The notes beneath the pieces were generated by a model that was given only the letters and a program-made list of their open reading frames with translations, was not told where the DNA came from and did no database searches. A stretch of DNA of 64,000 nt, taken from sequence record PQ741806.1. One strand, written 5' to 3'. This document shows, in pieces, positions 20,897 to 29,140 of the stretch (its first letter is position 1; every line of letters begins with the position of its first letter). The position numbers were made by a program, and so were the translations under genes.

Positions 20897-22780
20897 ATGA
20901 ATAAAATGCTAAACTTCCTAAACCGTACGCTATATAGCGGTACTGAAAAAGTATCTTCAAAAGCTACACCAAGTCTAGAACACTTTAAAACAAATGTTGA
21001 ACAAGTAGATAAAAAGATTCTACAACCCTTTAGTACTAAATTTAAAACCATTCTAAAAGAATGTTACAGTAATGAGGAGTGGGTTGAAGAACAATCATTT
21101 ATTGAAGAACCTATTGATCTTGGTTCAGCTGCACGCGGTCTTACCGAGCGCGGTATTATGCGTGGTGATTGGGGACGCTTAGCGCATTCCACTATTAAAG
21201 AAGCAGAAGGTATGATGCGTACTTATAGTGGTCGTCTAAATGAAGATATGGAGGCATCTGAAATTAATGAAGTAATTCAAGATATGCCTTATAACTTCAC
21301 AGCTGGCTCAGCTAATACTAGCCGTTTAGAAGAAGATGATTCTATTTTTGTTGAAGCAGATACAACTGTAGTTGAACCTCTGTCTAAGCAGACTCTGCCA
21401 AAAGTAGCAGAACTTACTAACCAACTAGTAGAAGTTTATAACCGAATCACTGAAGAATTTACAGAAACTGGTATTGCTAAAGTTGAACAAGTTGAACAGC
21501 CAGCAGTTCTTGTAGCACTTGGTGAGATCATTAGTAGTTTTAATAAACTAATTGATGCTTCATGTGGTGCTCTACCAGTGGAAGAAACTGTTATTGTAGA
21601 GGAGGATCCGTTACCTGCCATTGTTACTGGTCCAACTACTGAACCCATTGATGGTGAAATTCCACCTGTTGATGCTATTAATAATTCTGCGGCATTAGAA
21701 GAGTTTATTGAAGAAGTACTAAGTACTAATCCAGAATTCATTAAATACCAAAGTATGAATGATAGTAATATTGATTCATATCTAACTGGAGATGACTGGA
21801 TTATACTAAAATTTAAAGATGGTTCTTATTATTTATACAATGCCCAGAGTGCTGGTGAAACAAATATAGAAATCATGAAAGATATGGCCGAAACTGGTAG
21901 TGGTCTTAATGGTTTTATAAATCGAGTTATTCGTGGCGGGTATGTAGAGAAGTCCATCATTAATACTCCCGGTTTTATACAAGTCTCAAATGAAGGTCTT
22001 ATCGACACCATTAAGAGTATCTTCGACTCTGGCCCTGAGATCAATCTTGATAAAAAGAAGAAAGCTATTGCTACACTGAAAAGTACCTATGGTGATGCCA
22101 AATGGGTGGCAGAAGCAAAGCTTAAAACCGGCGAAGTAAAAGTATCGAGTTACGAGACGTTCGCGTCTAATGATCCTAAGACCGCAAAAGCCAATATCAC
22201 TAATGCTGTAGCTAAAGCTGATCGTCACAACCAGAAAGTTCTGGATGAGAACAGTAAGATACTAGCCCCCGTGGTTAATCTGTTCAAAGGGAATGATTGG
22301 CAAGACCCTAAGAAAGTCGCTACTCTTCTGGCTGAATGGAAACCCAATGTAAAGACAAACTTCCAAGAACCCAAATGGCCAGATAATGCTGGTGCTAAGA
22401 TTAAGTTGCTTGATGCTACCGGTATTGTGGAAGCAGCTAACGTTATCATTGACGTTCTGTCTAACAACACTAAGACTATTGCGGACACTTGGGTAGCCCA
22501 GTATCCTGACCTATCTGTCAATGGGGATATCTACAAACATAAGCTATCCACTATTAAAGATAAAGATGCTCTTGAGGACGTATATCTGCTGGCTAAACGG
22601 GCCGATAATATCATTCTTAACATTCATGCAGCGTACGACGATGCTAAGGTCGAATCTACCTATCGAGTATTTGCTATCGATATGTTGAAACTAATGCAAG
22701 CGTCTATCAGTAGCTTCCCAAGTGGTTCATCCGTAGAGAACACTAATGAACGCAATACGCTCATTGGTATTGAAGAATAA
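20897..22780 (+). CDS. Putative protease-processed inner head/ejection protein
   Basis: Acidic propeptide with SLE/ALE/SNE sites matching the phiKZ gp175 S/A/G-X-E specificity; SNE-GLIDTIKSIF; embedded KTSC-like segment. Confidence 0.65.
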   Translation: MNKMLNFLNRTLYSGTEKVSSKATPSLEHFKTNVEQVDKKILQPFSTKFKTILKECYSNEEWVEEQSFIEEPIDLGSAARGLTERGIMRGDWGRLAHSTIKEAEGMMRTYSGRLNEDMEASEINEVIQDMPYNFTAGSANTSRLEEDDSIFVEADTTVVEPLSKQTLPKVAELTNQLVEVYNRITEEFTETGIAKVEQVEQPAVLVALGEIISSFNKLIDASCGALPVEETVIVEEDPLPAIVTGPTTEPIDGEIPPVDAINNSAALEEFIEEVLSTNPEFIKYQSMNDSNIDSYLTGDDWIILKFKDGSYYLYNAQSAGETNIEIMKDMAETGSGLNGFINRVIRGGYVEKSIINTPGFIQVSNEGLIDTIKSIFDSGPEINLDKKKKAIATLKSTYGDAKWVAEAKLKTGEVKVSSYETFASNDPKTAKANITNAVAKADRHNQKVLDENSKILAPVVNLFKGNDWQDPKKVATLLAEWKPNVKTNFQEPKWPDNAGAKIKLLDATGIVEAANVIIDVLSNNTKTIADTWVAQYPDLSVNGDIYKHKLSTIKDKDALEDVYLLAKRADNIILNIHAAYDDAKVESTYRVFAIDMLKLMQASISSFPSGSSVENTNERNTLIGIEE

Positions 22781-25005: not shown

Positions 25006-25020
25006 TAAAATATTACTGGT

Positions 25021-25040
25021 TATGTAATACTATGTAGGAA
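25021..25040 (+). promoter_or_regulatory. Late-type promoter upstream of tRNA-Asp/Asn
   Basis: TATGTAATAC-TATGTAGGAA. Confidence 0.65.
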
Positions 25041-25246: not shown

Positions 25247-25300
25247 TATGTTGCCATGGGTTATCTTATGAATTAAAATGATTTACTTGAGAGCACACTC

Positions 25301-26308
25301 ATGTTTGAATTACTATTATCGCCAGATATAGGCGAAGAGTTACCCTTGGTTGGATTTAATGAAATTATTAAATTAGGTGATCTACCTGTAGCGTTAGCTG
25401 GTACAATGTCATATGTGGATGGAAATACACTGTATGTTGGATCTGGTCATCATACTGAAGGACAAACAGCTGCAACTGTGTTCAGACGTTTTACCATATC
25501 GCCATTTGCCGATATAGGTGCAACTGCTTCTGGAACATTCTTACCAGGGGTATCTTTAGGATTTGGGACATTACATAAGAATAACTTTATTGTTTATGGC
25601 GGTATTACTGGATGGAACTCGGCTGGTAATGGTGGTACGGGAACATCTAACTTTATACAACATTTTGATATAGCTACAGGCAATAGGGTTGAGCGATATA
25701 GTGGTCCCGTACCACTTTGGGGCACAGCCTCCGCATCAGATGGTAATGATCTTATTCTATGCGTTAACCCAATTGGCGTAAACGCAATGCGATTAAAACC
25801 ATCAAGTAAGTCTTGGCTTAGCGGGCAAGACTATTCAGGTGGTGCTCGTTCAGGTCAACAGTTATTCTTTTATAATGGTTACTTTTACCATTTTGGTGGT
25901 TGGGATAATACAAAGAACATACCTAATCTTGAAGTTTATCGATATAATGCAACTACCTTAATATGGGAGCAAACACCTTGGATGATTATACCTGCTGATA
26001 AAGGAACAATCTGGCAAGGTAATGGTTATGTAGATGGGGACTATTTTAATTACCTTAACGCTGTTGATGTCGGCGGTGTAACTAAAATGTTTGCACAACG
26101 TTTTAATATTAGGCGCCGGAAATGGGCTGAACCATTTGAACTAGGTATCGGATTCCTTAATATTTCATCTATAGCTAAAGGTCCGGATAATAGCATGATC
26201 ATTGTAGGTGGATCTAAAATGGCGGTTGGTGGTGGAGCATATATGTTGAAAAGCCAATTATTAACTGGTATATATCAAGTTAAAGTAGCCCCATTAGTTC
26301 TCGATTAA
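25301..26308 (+). CDS. Kelch-repeat beta-propeller protein (probably virion-associated)
   Basis: Repeated LYVGSG / FIVYGG / FYHFGGW / IIVGG blades with YxYNxxxxxW ends. Confidence 0.8.
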   Translation: MFELLLSPDIGEELPLVGFNEIIKLGDLPVALAGTMSYVDGNTLYVGSGHHTEGQTAATVFRRFTISPFADIGATASGTFLPGVSLGFGTLHKNNFIVYGGITGWNSAGNGGTGTSNFIQHFDIATGNRVERYSGPVPLWGTASASDGNDLILCVNPIGVNAMRLKPSSKSWLSGQDYSGGARSGQQLFFYNGYFYHFGGWDNTKNIPNLEVYRYNATTLIWEQTPWMIIPADKGTIWQGNGYVDGDYFNYLNAVDVGGVTKMFAQRFNIRRRKWAEPFELGIGFLNISSIAKGPDNSMIIVGGSKMAVGGGAYMLKSQLLTGIYQVKVAPLVLD

Positions 26309-26339
26309 ACTAAAGATAAAAATACTAGTGCGATGATAT

Positions 26340-26575
26340 TATGTAGGATTACTTTATCTAGATAATCCTAAAGCTATCCACTAAATACACTCGGTGGTAG
26401 ATTTAATTATAGAGTGTGTCTGAATGCCAGGGGTTTGCCACCCCTGGCTATATTATGTCAATGAGTGTATCTCGTTCTTTATAACCACTATTGATATTTA
26501 ATATAGGTGAAGGGAAGGTGACGAGGCCTTTTCCATAGCCGGTATATAACCTAATTTAATAAAGGTTATATACTA
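26340..26575 (+). ncRNA. Candidate structured RNA with possible pseudoknot
   Basis: TATGTAG start, several hairpins, loop-to-distal 8-bp pairing; no credible ORF. Confidence 0.5.
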
Positions 26576-26599
26576 CATTGTAATAAAGGAACTTCTATA

Positions 26600-27124
26600 A
26601 TGAATAACACAAATCAGTTTGTAAAAACTATTGTTGATTACCAGGCTATCCTGGATGCATTGATATATAAAACTAATGAGAATTGGAATAAGTATGGGAT
26701 GCATTATCATCTTAATGATGTCAGTCATATCACTATACGTGAACATAGAACAGTAGGGTTTTTTATTGGTCGTCAATCTGGTAGTACTACAGCATTAATG
26801 GAATTTTCAAAACGCTACCCTGGTGAATGTTTGGCAGTATTCACCGACGAAAGAATTCGACGTGGTGCTCAAGATAAACTATCCAAAACACCAGATAACA
26901 TTATTCCATATTTAACTACATTTAAACTACGTAGCTATATCCATAAATCTGGACTATCAACGATCCAGAAAGACTTTAATGAAAATTTACTTTCAGATAT
27001 CCGCTATATACTTGTAGATAACGCATCTTATAATCTGAATTTACGAGGTATTACTGATAAAGAATTTAATCAGTGGGTAGCTGATACTTTTGGTACTAGT
27101 GTAATTGTAGTTCGTTTTAGTTAA
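26600..27124 (+). CDS. P-loop-like protein with degenerate Walker A
   Basis: FFIGRQSGSTT and YILVD; lacks the Walker A Lys. Confidence 0.6.
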   Translation: MNNTNQFVKTIVDYQAILDALIYKTNENWNKYGMHYHLNDVSHITIREHRTVGFFIGRQSGSTTALMEFSKRYPGECLAVFTDERIRRGAQDKLSKTPDNIIPYLTTFKLRSYIHKSGLSTIQKDFNENLLSDIRYILVDNASYNLNLRGITDKEFNQWVADTFGTSVIVVRFS

Positions 27125-27141
27125 AGTATAAAAATAAAATA

Positions 27142-27166
27142 AAAGCCCTCCATCACGGAGGGCTTT
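27142..27166 (+). terminator. Intrinsic terminator
   Basis: AAAGCCCTCC-atcac-GGAGGGCTTT. Confidence 0.85.
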
Positions 27167-27245
27167 ATGTTGTTATGATATGAAGTTGTATCATCTTAAT
27201 AGATACGTGCCACGCATACGCGAAGTCATAAAAATGGCTTTGTGT

Positions 27246-27804
27246 ATGTCATTTAACTAAAACATATGTTCCAGAAAATAAACCAACCCATTCATTAATT
27301 GCGGCTACTCCTGGTAAACCTATTAAGTTTGCCGATTTAGATGCGGTGCCAGTAACATATGGGATTGGCGATAAATACATAGCTCTTTTCGATACAGCGT
27401 CAATATATTTAGTTAGTGCTGTAACTATATATCAAGCTGGTTTAATGGCGTCTTCCGGTGACATGACTGATAAGTTACCAAGTGCAATGATAACTGCTTT
27501 AGGAGGCCCTGTTCAACAAGGTCGTAATATCGAAATGCAGGATGTTACTTGGGAGGTTAGTATACCTACTATAGAAGAGTGTACTGAATACCTTTTAACA
27601 TTCTTCTGTAGTCGAGTTAAACGTACTCAACGCCCTTTAATTAGTATCCGATTAGCAGATTCGTATAAAATACTATCATCAACTGTATCCACTAATAATC
27701 CATCTAATCTTTTAGCAATCGATAGTGATGGTAAAGTAGTTGAAACCACAGTTACTGCTAACTGCTATATTTATCTAATATTAAAACCTGTTCTTAAAAG
27801 CTAA
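27246..27804 (+). pseudogene. Frameshifted gene, possibly of a phiKZ-like virion paralogue family
   Basis: ATG TCA then one extra T before the open frame LTKTYVPENK...IYQAGL...; the frame is open 27232-27804 with no ATG before codon 38. Confidence 0.5.
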
Positions 27805-28653: not shown

Positions 28654-28791
28654 TTACTCTGCTACATCTTTTACATCAGGTTTATTATTTCCACGCACTG
28701 CTCTCACGATACCATACGTAAGAATAAGAGCACCTACGGTGCCAATAGTGGCGCTAACAATAATACCAAAAGTTTTTGGATCAATATTCAT
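28654..28791 (-). CDS. Small single-TM early protein (45 aa, not in ORF track)
   Basis: MNIDPKTFGIIVSATIGTVGALILTYGIVRAV...; own early promoter and terminator (28620-28644). Confidence 0.75.
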   Translation of the reverse strand: MNIDPKTFGIIVSATIGTVGALILTYGIVRAVRGNNKPDVKDVAE

Positions 28792-28847
28792 ATTTAGTAT
28801 CCTATTTACAATTAATAGAAAATATTACATTTAGTAATATCAAGTTA

Positions 28848-28876
28848 ATAATATACTGTTTAAATAAGTTTGAATA
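28848..28876 (-). promoter_or_regulatory. Early promoter variant
   Basis: TATTCAAACTTATTTAAACAGTATATTAT; shares the leader tract AACTTGATAT with 12144/13995. Confidence 0.75.
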
Positions 28877-28934
28877 TAACTCTATTTATTATAATAAAAT
28901 AATACTTTCATATACACTATATGTAGAAGATTCC

Positions 28935-29011
28935 GCCGCTATAGCTCAGCTAGGTAGAGCAACGCACTTGTAATGCGTAGGTCCTCCGTTCGATTCGGAG
29001 TGGCGGCACCA
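28935..29011 (+). tRNA. tRNA-Thr(UGU)
   Basis: ACGCA-CTTGTAA-TGCGT, encoded CCA; TATGTAG at 28920. Confidence 0.95.
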
Positions 29012-29089
29012 AATTTACTGAGGTTTAAACTATTCTTAAATATATTAGTTAGGATGGGATTGAACGTGAAAGACTCAGTAAATCATATT

Positions 29090-29109
29090 GCCCCTCCATA
29101 TGGAGGGGC
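29090..29109 (+). terminator. Intrinsic terminator
   Basis: GCCCCTCC-atat-GGAGGGGC. Confidence 0.85.
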
Positions 29110-29140
29110 TTATGTTTGTCATTAATCAGGAAAATATAAA

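What the first reader, a model, noticed from the sequence alone, without database searches (positions are those of the whole stretch)
26340..26575. About 230-nt structured RNA with a possible pseudoknot
It starts at TATGTAG and contains hairpins TAGGATTA/TAATCCTA (26344-26370), CCAC/GTGG (26378-26397), GCCAGGGG/CCCCTGGC (26426-26448) and GTATATAACCT/AGGTTATATAC (26542-26573). The loop sequence ATACACTC (26385-26392) pairs perfectly with GAGTGTAT (26463-26470) and alternatively with GAGTGTGT (26412), suggesting a pseudoknot or switch. It may be an independent ncRNA or a regulatory leader for 26600..27124.
Basis: partly seen in the sequence, partly recalled or inferred. Interest (0 to 1): 0.65.

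Follow-up and report, generated by a model that had tools for sequence, protein, structure and literature searches.

The report
Known phiKZ small RNA plus leader
The flagged stretch is the 256-base leader of a jumbo-phage gene, and its first 111 bases match a small RNA already detected experimentally in phage phiKZ, so it is real but mostly already known.

Summary
The window is a phiKZ-like jumbo phage of Pseudomonas aeruginosa, 100% identical to Pa_AttikonH10, KTN4 and fnug over the 2.1 kb compared.

It is not one 230-nt RNA. It is the 5' leader of the PHIKZ297 homologue (26600-27124), in two modules.

- **Module 1 (26344-26454, 111 nt).** This is the orthologue of the published phiKZ ncRNA "3'UTR_PHIKZ298" (Grad-seq and northern blot, 2021). 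ONT-cappable-seq re-mapped that RNA in 2024 to phiKZ 270595-270485(-), with its own start site. Here it begins just after a conserved TACT-N13-TATG promoter, has three hairpins, and ends at an intrinsic terminator (26426-26448).
- **Module 2 (26466-26599).** This leader segment is also conserved in phiPA3. It has two covarying hairpins. A candidate loop-to-upstream pairing (26471-76 with 26520-25) has not, as far as I found, been described.

That segment is lineage-specific and lies downstream of the terminator.

The function is still unknown. The most likely mechanism is promoter-proximal termination that limits gp297 expression and releases a stable small RNA.

The parts
25301..26308 (+). 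Upstream gene, the homologue of PHIKZ298 (virion structural protein)
   Evidence: phrog_19623, E = 1.9e-218. Annotated as such.
26311..26343 (+). Phage promoter: an A-rich tract, TACT (26323-26), 13 nt, then TATG (26340-43)
   Evidence: ATACT and TATG are conserved in all 10 aligned phages, including phiPA3. TACT-N13-TATG occurs 9 times in the window against 4.1 expected, and no shuffle of 100 reached 9. Copies at 25014 and 28903 precede tRNA genes. Wicke et al. describe a TACT motif about 22 nt upstream of start sites, preceded by an A-rich repeat, resembling the phiKZ middle-gene promoter motif.
26344..26454 (+). The 111-nt small RNA, orthologue of the phiKZ ncRNA at 270595-270485(-)
   Evidence: BLAST maps window 26314-26454 onto phiKZ 270625-270485. 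Covariance model R1 scores 146.9 bits here and 144.9 bits in phiKZ. The published boundaries, start site and northern blot are in PMC10914365, and the Grad-seq data in PMC8545117.
26344..26370 (+). SL1, the 5' hairpin (8 bp, plus 2 more with a bulge)
   Evidence: Two pairs change on both sides and stay paired: G-C to A-U and U-A to G-U. This segment is only 63% identical to phiKZ, yet it folds in both.
26378..26385 (+). Invariant single-stranded CCACUAAA linker, a candidate recognition site
   Evidence: Identical in all 9 Phikzvirus-type sequences, including the diverged L023.
26385..26419 (+). SL2, the long hairpin (26385-92 paired with 26412-19)
   Evidence: It is in both the RNAalifold consensus and the minimum-energy fold. 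C-to-U changes opposite G keep the pairs intact. L023 has 2 mismatches out of 8 pairs.
26426..26454 (+). SL3, the intrinsic terminator hairpin (26426-34 with 26440-48), plus a UAUAUU tail that gives the 3' end of the small RNA
   Evidence: The terminator scan finds it. It is worth -18.6 kcal/mol. L023 keeps an 8-9 bp stem built from different inner bases, read in its own register and folded. In the column count, L022 keeps every pair through G-U wobbles, while L023 scores as partly unpaired because its stem is offset by one base. The mapped phiKZ 3' end, 270485, corresponds to window 26454.
26455..26470 (+).
   Evidence: Absent from phiKZ, SL2, PA7 and L022. Changed in T2P, L024 and L023.
26471..26476 (+). 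CUCGUU, the 5' strand of the candidate pseudoknot with the H4 loop
   Evidence: It pairs with GACGAG 26520-25, with duplex energies of -6.6 to -8.8 kcal/mol in the window type, the T2P type, L023 and phiPA3. Of the cells with letters, 84.9% are paired, and loop-side changes keep the pairing. Both strands are lost together in the phiKZ type and in L022.
26512..26533 (+). H4 hairpin, with the 6-nt loop GACGAG (26520-25)
   Evidence: It folds in all 9 sequences, phiPA3 included, using different stem sequences.
26541..26574 (+).
   Evidence: A hairpin is present at the same place in all 9 sequences, from -8.1 to -24.1 kcal/mol. A base pair covaries between U-A and C-G, with 4 double-changed cells and 100% of cells paired. 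In phiPA3 it is GC-rich and followed by TTTATGTTG, like the phiKZ terminator motif quoted.
26575..26599 (+). Near-invariant stretch carrying the Shine-Dalgarno sequence (AAGGA, 26586-90), 9 nt before the ATG
   Evidence: CATTGTAATA followed by GGA is identical in all 10 sequences, including phiPA3.
26600..27124 (+). Downstream gene, the homologue of PHIKZ297 (174 aa, function unknown)
   Evidence: phrog_2586, E = 5.8e-43, with no Pfam match. It is 63% identical to PHIKZ297 and 61% to phiPA3 gp367. The AlphaFold2 model has mean pLDDT 62.8, and only weak hits to P-loop/RecA-like folds.
27142..27166 (+). Terminator that ends the read-through gp297 transcript
   Evidence: The terminator scan finds it on both strands. 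It is followed by TTTATGTTGT, which fits the phiKZ terminator motif quoted.

Best explanation
The region is the 256-nt 5' leader of the PHIKZ297-family gene of a phiKZ-like jumbo phage.

A phage promoter of the class that also drives the neighbouring tRNA genes (A-rich tract, TACT, 13 nt, TATG) starts transcription at about 26344.

Most transcripts are inferred to stop at the strong hairpin 26426-48 plus its U/A tail. This releases a stable 111-nt RNA with three hairpins (26344-26454). It is the orthologue of the phiKZ ncRNA first called 3'UTR_PHIKZ298 and later reassigned to the 5'UTR of PHIKZ297.

A fraction of transcripts reads through. These continue across a second conserved structured segment and on into the gene. 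That segment holds a possible pseudoknot (26471-76 with the loop of hairpin 26512-33), then hairpin 26541-74, then the ribosome-binding site.

**Shown here or in the literature:** the homology, the synteny, the conserved promoter and terminator, structure-preserving substitutions, and the existence, ends and abundance of the RNA in phiKZ.

**Inferred:** that this phage makes the same RNA; that termination at 26454 works as an attenuator limiting gp297 output; and that the released RNA or the second module has a further role.
For: **Identity of the window**
- It is 100% identical to Pa_AttikonH10, KTN4 and fnug over 25300-27400.
- The gap lies between the PHIKZ298 and PHIKZ297 homologues.

**Homology to the published RNA**
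- Window 26314-26454 aligns to phiKZ 270625-270485(-).
- The published RNA, 270595-270485(-), therefore equals window 26344-26454.
- Model R1 scores 146.9 bits in the window and 144.9 bits in phiKZ, with one copy per genome.

**Literature**
- An abundant RNA of about 100 nt between PHIKZ298 and PHIKZ297 was seen by Grad-seq and northern blot (PMC8545117).
- Its boundaries were refined, and a start site was identified, by ONT-cappable-seq and northern blot (PMC10914365). That paper suggests it is generated from the 5'UTR of the PHIKZ297 mRNA.
- Many phiKZ 5'UTRs show a predominant short transcript plus a read-through form.

**Promoter**
- The motif is conserved and enriched in the window, and it matches the published TACT motif.

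**Structure**
- The overall pair counts beat the shuffle controls.
- SL1 keeps its pairs through changes on both sides.
- L023 keeps the SL3 stem using different bases.
- All substitutions in SL2 among the close relatives are wobble-compatible.

**RNA libraries from phiKZ-infected cells**
- In two phiKZ RNA libraries, contigs break at about 26341-44.
- In the nanopore library, several short contigs also end at 26452-55.
- The core segment has the highest word depth: 64.8 against 26.6 for gp298 and 19.6 for gp297.
- One contig runs from 26341 through the terminator into gp297.

**Second module**
- It is significantly homologous to the phiPA3 leader: score 40, 0 of 1000 shuffles as high.
- Its hairpins are conserved.
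Against: - No RNA data exist for this phage lineage itself. The libraries found are of phiKZ, and Logan contigs cannot prove starts, ends or abundance.
- Differential RNA-seq at the early time point found no start site here (cited). Promoter use may therefore be limited to middle or late infection.
- Only six to nine distinct sequences are available, falling into about four lineages, so the covariation rests on few independent events.
- No alternative (antiterminator) structure was found, so regulated attenuation is unproven. Termination may simply be constitutive and partial.
- No function is known for the RNA or for gp297.
Confidence: 0.8

Rival explanations
1. One reading: one independent structured RNA of about 230 nt (26340-26575). 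Its loop ATACACTC would alternate between GAGTGTGT (26412) and GAGTGTAT (26463), forming a pseudoknot or switch.
For: All the complementary segments exist as described. The whole region folds well, z = -4.37.
Against: - The 26463-70 partner is missing or altered in every lineage except the window/OMKO1 type.
- It lies beyond the mapped 3' end of the small RNA and beyond the terminator. It is therefore transcribed too late to affect termination.
- The pairing is 2.9 kcal/mol less stable than the local SL2.
- Homology to the phiKZ type drops sharply at 26454, so the two halves have separate histories.
- CCAC/GTGG is not maintained in L023.
Confidence: 0.05
2. The small RNA is a 3'UTR fragment cut from the PHIKZ298 (25301-26308) mRNA, as first proposed in the Grad-seq paper. 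It would not be a primary transcript.
For: - No start site was mapped here by early-infection dRNA-seq.
- The northern probe also detected longer, mRNA-like species.
- The gp298 contig in the RNA libraries runs into SL1.
Against: - ONT-cappable-seq identified a start site for this RNA and reassigned it to the PHIKZ297 5'UTR.
- A conserved, enriched promoter motif ends exactly one base before the mapped 5' end.
- phiPA3 keeps the same promoter and first hairpin in front of its gp297 homologue. There that gene is not downstream of the gp298 homologue.
Confidence: 0.1
3. The released 111-nt RNA acts in trans, as a base-pairing sRNA or as a protein-binding decoy. It would use the invariant single-stranded CCACUAAA linker and the conserved SL2 apical sequence. 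This could hold alongside the attenuator role.
For: - SL2 to SL3 is 92% identical between the window and phiKZ. SL1 is 63% identical, and the last ~90 nt of gp298 differ from phiKZ at about 15 positions. This points to constraint on the sequence itself, not only on the structure.
- CCACUAAA is invariant in 9 of 9 sequences.
- The RNA is abundant and sediments in light fractions, away from ribosomes.
Against: - No partner is known.
- A duplex scan of the exposed segments against 198 start regions in the window gave no credible sense-strand target. The one outlier is a same-strand 13-nt repeat at 22541-53, inside a coding region.
- The host genome was not scanned.
- No functional study was found in the literature up to 2026.
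Confidence: 0.25
4. The body of the small RNA is a decayed tRNA gene in this tRNA island, with the old anticodon arm now serving as the terminator.
For: - It lies among six tRNA genes and shares their promoter type.
- 26391-26401 resembles a tRNA D-loop.
- The best local alignment is to the anticodon-arm region of a phiPA3 tRNA-like gene. Only 8 to 19 of 500 shuffles score as high.
Against: - ARAGORN finds nothing here.
- The Rfam tRNA models give no hit even at E up to 10.
- The similarity is marginal and rests mostly on a G/C-rich hairpin of a kind common among phiKZ terminators.
- There is no cloverleaf, no T-loop and no acceptor stem.
Confidence: 0.05

Closest known systems
phiKZ ncRNA '3'UTR_PHIKZ298', also described as the 5'UTR-derived ncRNA of PHIKZ297 (Gerovac et al. 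2021, PMC8545117; Putzeys et al. 2024, PMC10914365)
   Same: - Same locus, between the gp298 and gp297 homologues.
- 84-87% nucleotide identity over 141 nt.
- Same promoter, same three hairpins, same terminator and the same 111-nt length.
   Different: - SL1 has diverged to 63% identity, with compensating changes.
- This lineage carries an extra insert of about 16-22 nt after the terminator, and a different gp297 allele (63% amino-acid identity).
- Expression has not been measured in this lineage.
Other phiKZ and 201phi2-1 5'UTR-derived short RNAs made by premature termination, for example upstream of PHIKZ221 and PHIKZ302 (PMC10914365; PMC11512511)
   Same: The start site is followed within 250 nt by an intrinsic terminator. 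This gives a predominant short RNA plus a read-through mRNA.
   Different: There is no sequence or covariance-model similarity to any other site in the window or in the phiKZ genome.
Bacterial transcription attenuators and riboswitch leaders
   Same: A structured leader with a terminator sits between the promoter and the gene. Two tandem structured modules precede the ribosome-binding site.
   Different: No conserved antiterminator alternative was found, no ligand or leader peptide is evident, and there is no Rfam match.

Membership tests
phiKZ ncRNA between PHIKZ298 and PHIKZ297 | Located in the gap between the gp298 and gp297 homologues, on the same strand | tested here: met
phiKZ ncRNA between PHIKZ298 and PHIKZ297 | Sequence and structure homology to phiKZ 270595-270485(-) | tested here: met
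   BLAST E = 5e-36. Model R1 scores 146.9 bits against 144.9 in phiKZ.
phiKZ ncRNA between PHIKZ298 and PHIKZ297 | Its own promoter and start site directly upstream | tested here: met
   At the sequence level only. TACT-N13-TATG is conserved and enriched. The start site itself is published for phiKZ only.
phiKZ ncRNA between PHIKZ298 and PHIKZ297 | An RNA of about 111 nt that accumulates during infection | not testable with these tools
   Only phiKZ RNA libraries were found, and those are kept as contigs. The two raw-read runs tried held no phage reads.
Intrinsic terminator of the phiKZ type | A G+C-rich hairpin followed by a T/A-rich tail containing TTAT | tested here: met
   Nine base pairs, 7 of them G-C, with tail TATATTATGT. 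The published motif is quoted. Unlike that motif, the G-rich arm comes first here.
Riboswitch or regulated attenuator | A conserved alternative structure that competes with the terminator | tested here: not met
   No conserved complement to either terminator arm lies upstream. There are no Rfam hits.
   The 26463-70 strand is not conserved. CCAC/GTGG is broken in L023.
tRNA or tRNA-like RNA | A cloverleaf detectable by ARAGORN or the Rfam tRNA models | tested here: not met
   Only a marginal local similarity was found.
Any Rfam 15 family | A score at or near the gathering threshold | tested here: not met
   The best hit is 20.4 bits against a gathering score of 70, E = 0.28.

The most novel reading that the evidence does not exclude
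The second half of the leader (26466-26599) may be a conserved cis-regulatory RNA element of the gp297 gene family. It is shared by two jumbo-phage genera, Phikzvirus and Miltoncavirus (phiPA3).

Its parts would be:
- a pseudoknot between CUCGUU and the GACGAG loop of hairpin H4;
- a covarying hairpin, H5, which in phiPA3 looks like a canonical terminator;
- the ribosome-binding site that follows.

Together with the 111-nt RNA released upstream, this would form a two-step RNA control system read by a phage factor, possibly gp297 itself, or by the phage RNA polymerase.
Probability: 0.2. Interest if true: 0.55.

Novelty: already known. Interest (0 to 1): 0.3.

Why it matters
phiKZ-like phages transcribe their genomes with their own RNA polymerases inside a protein shell, and very little is known about RNA-based control in them. 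This locus holds one of the few experimentally seen phiKZ non-coding RNAs.

This work adds four things:
- the exact orthologue in the KTN4/AttikonH10 lineage;
- the promoter class the RNA shares with the phage tRNA genes;
- which helices the comparison of relatives supports and which it does not;
- a second conserved leader module, shared with phiPA3, with a testable pseudoknot.

These give concrete mutants for anyone who wants to find out what the RNA does. They do not change the current picture, in which the function is unknown.

Tried and rejected
**Known RNA families.** Rfam at gathering and at relaxed thresholds finds only the six tRNAs elsewhere in the window. The hits in the region are noise.

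**More relatives**
- A pattern scan and a gp298-based scan of IMG/VR found only one known PA7-like contig.
- The metagenome scan found none.
- Extra diversity came only from three contigs that encode gp297 variants.

**Other copies.** Model R1 finds no second copy in the window or in phiKZ. It finds no copy at all in phiPA3, BRkr or phiHQ. BRkr and phiHQ also lack gp297, and in them gp298 is followed directly by the tRNA-Asn promoter.

**Rejected ideas**
- *Tandem duplication of the two modules:* not significant, 142 of 1000 shuffles score as high.
- *tRNA relic:* marginal only.
- *Kissing interaction between the SL1 loop and the SL2 apical loop:* 83% of cells are paired and one pair is compensatory, but this is no better than the shuffles.
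- *Small ORFs in the leader (22 and 25 aa):* they have no Shine-Dalgarno sequence, and relatives break their frame with indels.

**Target scan.** Trans-target duplex scan in the window found no credible target.

**gp297 function.** No Pfam and no PDB sequence hit. The fold search gives only weak matches to P-loop/RecA-like folds, all with E > 5e-3.

**Raw RNA reads.** The two 2026 runs tried contained no phage reads.

Full report
**What the window is.** The 2.1 kb around the finding is 100% identical to Pseudomonas phages Pa_AttikonH10, KTN4 and fnug. It is 90-97% identical to other Phikzvirus members. The finding sits in the 291-nt gap between the homologue of PHIKZ298 and the homologue of PHIKZ297. 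PHIKZ298 is a virion structural protein (25301-26308). The PHIKZ297 homologue (26600-27124) belongs to phrog_2586, of unknown function. Both lie on the + strand, inside a cluster of six phage tRNA genes.

**Observation check.** Every motif and coordinate in the finding is correct. The region folds far better than shuffled sequence:
- 26340-26600: -78.3 kcal/mol, z = -4.37, 0 of 200 shuffles as good.
- 26344-26454: -38.5 kcal/mol, z = -4.27, 0 of 200 shuffles as good.

**It is a known RNA.** BLAST aligns window 26314-26454 to phiKZ 270625-270485 on the minus strand, without gaps.
- Gerovac et al. found an abundant RNA of about 100 nt between PHIKZ298 and PHIKZ297 by Grad-seq and northern blot. 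It sedimented in light fractions. They took it for a 3'UTR fragment, because no start site had been mapped (PMC8545117).
- Putzeys et al. re-mapped it to 270595-270485(-) by ONT-cappable-seq and northern blot. They identified a start site and suggested that it arises from the 5'UTR of the PHIKZ297 mRNA (PMC10914365). They describe a general pattern in phiKZ 5'UTRs: a predominant short transcript plus a read-through form.
- Transferred to the window, the RNA is 26344-26454, 111 nt.
- A covariance model built from six relatives scores 146.9 bits here and 144.9 bits in phiKZ, once per genome.
- No later functional study was found. A 2026 review still says only that phiKZ expresses non-coding RNAs.

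**Promoter.** The mapped 5' end follows TATG (26340-43) directly. Thirteen bases upstream lies TACT (26323-26), preceded by an A-rich run.
- ATACT and TATG are conserved in all ten aligned sequences, including phiPA3.
- TACT-N13-TATG occurs 9 times in the window against 4.1 expected, and none of 100 shuffles reached 9. Six of the nine lie on the + strand between 22783 and 29793. The copies at 25014 and 28903 precede tRNA genes.
- Wicke et al. describe a TACT motif centred 22 nt upstream of start sites and preceded by an A-rich repeat. They say it resembles the phiKZ middle-gene promoter motif, and they saw it on this strand, for example at PHIKZ301, 305 and 306.
- The same architecture, with the same spacing, precedes the tRNA-Asn downstream of PHIKZ297 in phiKZ. 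It also lies directly after gp298 in BRkr and phiHQ, which lack both the small RNA and gp297.

**Structure of the 111-nt RNA.** RNAalifold and the single-sequence folds agree on three hairpins.
- *SL1 (26344-70)* is only 63% identical between the window and phiKZ. It keeps its pairs through two changes on both sides.
- *SL2 (26385-92 with 26412-19)* shows only C/U changes opposite G among the close relatives. The diverged contig L023 has two mismatches out of eight pairs.
- *SL3 (26426-34 with 26440-48)* is the terminator hairpin, worth -18.6 kcal/mol. L023 keeps an 8-9 bp stem with different inner bases, seen in its own register. L022 keeps every pair through G-U wobbles.
- Over nine sequences, 95.4% of cells are paired. 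Four pairs show changes on both sides, and the covariation score is reached by 1 of 500 shuffles.
- The sequences fall into about four lineages, so this is moderate support, not strong.

- The third strand (26463-70) lies in a segment absent from phiKZ, SL2, PA7 and L022, and altered in T2P, L024 and L023.
- It lies beyond the terminator and beyond the mapped 3' end.
- The pairing is 2.9 kcal/mol worse than SL2.
- CCAC/GTGG is worth only -2.6 kcal/mol. It never varies among the close relatives, and 3 of its 4 pairs are lost in L023.
- A pseudoknot of CCAC/GTGG with SL2 is geometrically possible, but nothing supports it.

**Conservation pattern.** Between the window and phiKZ, SL2 to SL3 is 92% identical and SL1 is 63%. 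The last 90 nt or so of gp298 differ from phiKZ at about 15 positions. CCACUAAA (26378-85) is invariant in 9 of 9 sequences. Similarity to the phiKZ-type phages falls sharply at 26454. Downstream of that point the gp297 alleles are only 63% identical in protein.

**Second module.** The rest of the leader, 26466-26599, has its own history. It is significantly similar to the leader of the gp297 homologue of phiPA3, a phage of another genus: score 40, and none of 1000 shuffles scored as high. In phiPA3 the SL2 and SL3 module is replaced by about 190 nt of unrelated G+C-rich sequence. The conserved parts are:
- *Hairpin H4 (26512-33).* It folds in all nine sequences with different stem bases.
A base pair covaries between U-A and C-G, with four double-changed cells and 100% of cells paired. 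In phiPA3 it is G+C-rich and followed by a tail like the published phiKZ terminator motif.
- *A near-invariant stretch* carrying the Shine-Dalgarno sequence.

**A candidate pseudoknot in the second module.**
- The six-base H4 loop (26520-25) is complementary to 26471-76.
- The duplex is -6.6 to -8.8 kcal/mol in four lineages, phiPA3 included.
- Three different loop variants all keep the pairing.
- Two lineages, the phiKZ type and L022, have lost both strands.

I found no description of this pairing. It is a candidate pseudoknot, not a demonstrated one.

**RNA evidence I could obtain.** Only phiKZ RNA libraries hold this locus, and they are available as contigs, which cannot prove ends or abundance.
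- Contig breaks fall at the equivalent of 26341-44 in both libraries. In the nanopore library several short contigs also end at 26452-55.
- The core has the highest word depth (64.8, against 26.6 for gp298 and 19.6 for gp297).
- One contig runs from 26341 through the terminator into gp297.
- This is consistent with the published picture but is not independent proof. The two raw-read runs tried held no phage reads.

**The downstream gene.** gp297 homologues occur across the nucleus-forming jumbo phages phiPA3, Psa21, Phabio, 201phi2-1 and EL. In Psa21 and Phabio they sit next to tRNA genes. There is no Pfam or PDB sequence match. The AlphaFold2 model is moderate, with mean pLDDT 62.8 and the first 60 residues poor. 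It resembles P-loop/RecA-like folds only weakly, with best E = 5e-3. The conserved GRQSGSTT and LVDNAS motifs look like degenerate Walker motifs; this is my reading and was not tested.

**Most likely mechanism.** This part is inferred.
- The phage polymerase starts at about 26344.
- Most transcripts stop at SL3 and release the stable 111-nt RNA.
- A fraction continues through the second module into gp297.
- Termination thus acts as an attenuator, keeping gp297 output low relative to promoter strength.

I found no conserved antiterminator, so regulated termination is not shown. A trans-acting role is possible and not exclusive, but it has no evidence yet. A duplex scan of the window found no credible target.

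**Verdict.** The core feature is already known from phiKZ. The new, modest additions are the exact orthologue and promoter class in this lineage, the comparative test of each helix, and the second leader module shared with phiPA3, with its candidate pseudoknot.

Noticed in passing
L003:2436-2568 (phiKZ, downstream of PHIKZ297); L012:3103-3236 (BRkr): Behind a TACT-N13-TATG promoter lies what looks like the 5' half of a tRNA-Asn. Directly after it comes an 87-nt tRNA with a long variable arm and a GUU (Asn) anticodon, called by ARAGORN. A class-II-shaped tRNA with an Asn anticodon is unusual. This gene is absent from the window's lineage.
   Followed up: partly
window 25014-25034 and 28903-28923; also 22783, 29318 and 29773: TACT-N13-TATG promoter-like sites cluster on the + strand in the tRNA island. 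Two of them lie directly upstream of tRNA-Asp/Asn and tRNA-Thr.
   Followed up: partly
window 26454 (boundary) and about 26220: There are mosaic boundaries. Identity to phiKZ-type phages is about 97-100% through most of gp298. It falls to roughly 81-85% from about 26220, and is no longer detected by megablast after 26454. The gp297 alleles are only 63% identical in protein, which suggests allele exchange by recombination at the terminator.
   Followed up: partly
window 22541-22553: An exact 13-nt same-strand copy of the small RNA's linker (26371-83) sits inside the coding region of the large virion structural gene. It is probably chance.
   Followed up: partly
window 28776-29125: The deposited annotation of the identical phage places two short protein-coding genes over tRNA-Thr (28935-29011). 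These are probably spurious gene calls.
   Followed up: no
L013:1680-1995 (phiPA3): The 315-nt gap before the phiPA3 gp297 homologue is annotated with an antisense ORF (gp368). It looks instead like a structured leader, with z = -3.58. It ends in a canonical terminator-like hairpin just before the ribosome-binding site, so phiPA3 may make a leader RNA of about 270 nt.
   Followed up: partly
window 26600-27124: The gp297 family has conserved GRQSGSTT and LVDNAS motifs and a weak P-loop/RecA-like predicted fold. In Psa21, Phabio and 201phi2-1 it lies near a radical-SAM/RlmN-like gene, and in Psa21 and Phabio next to tRNA genes. This hints at a role in RNA or tRNA metabolism.
   Followed up: partly
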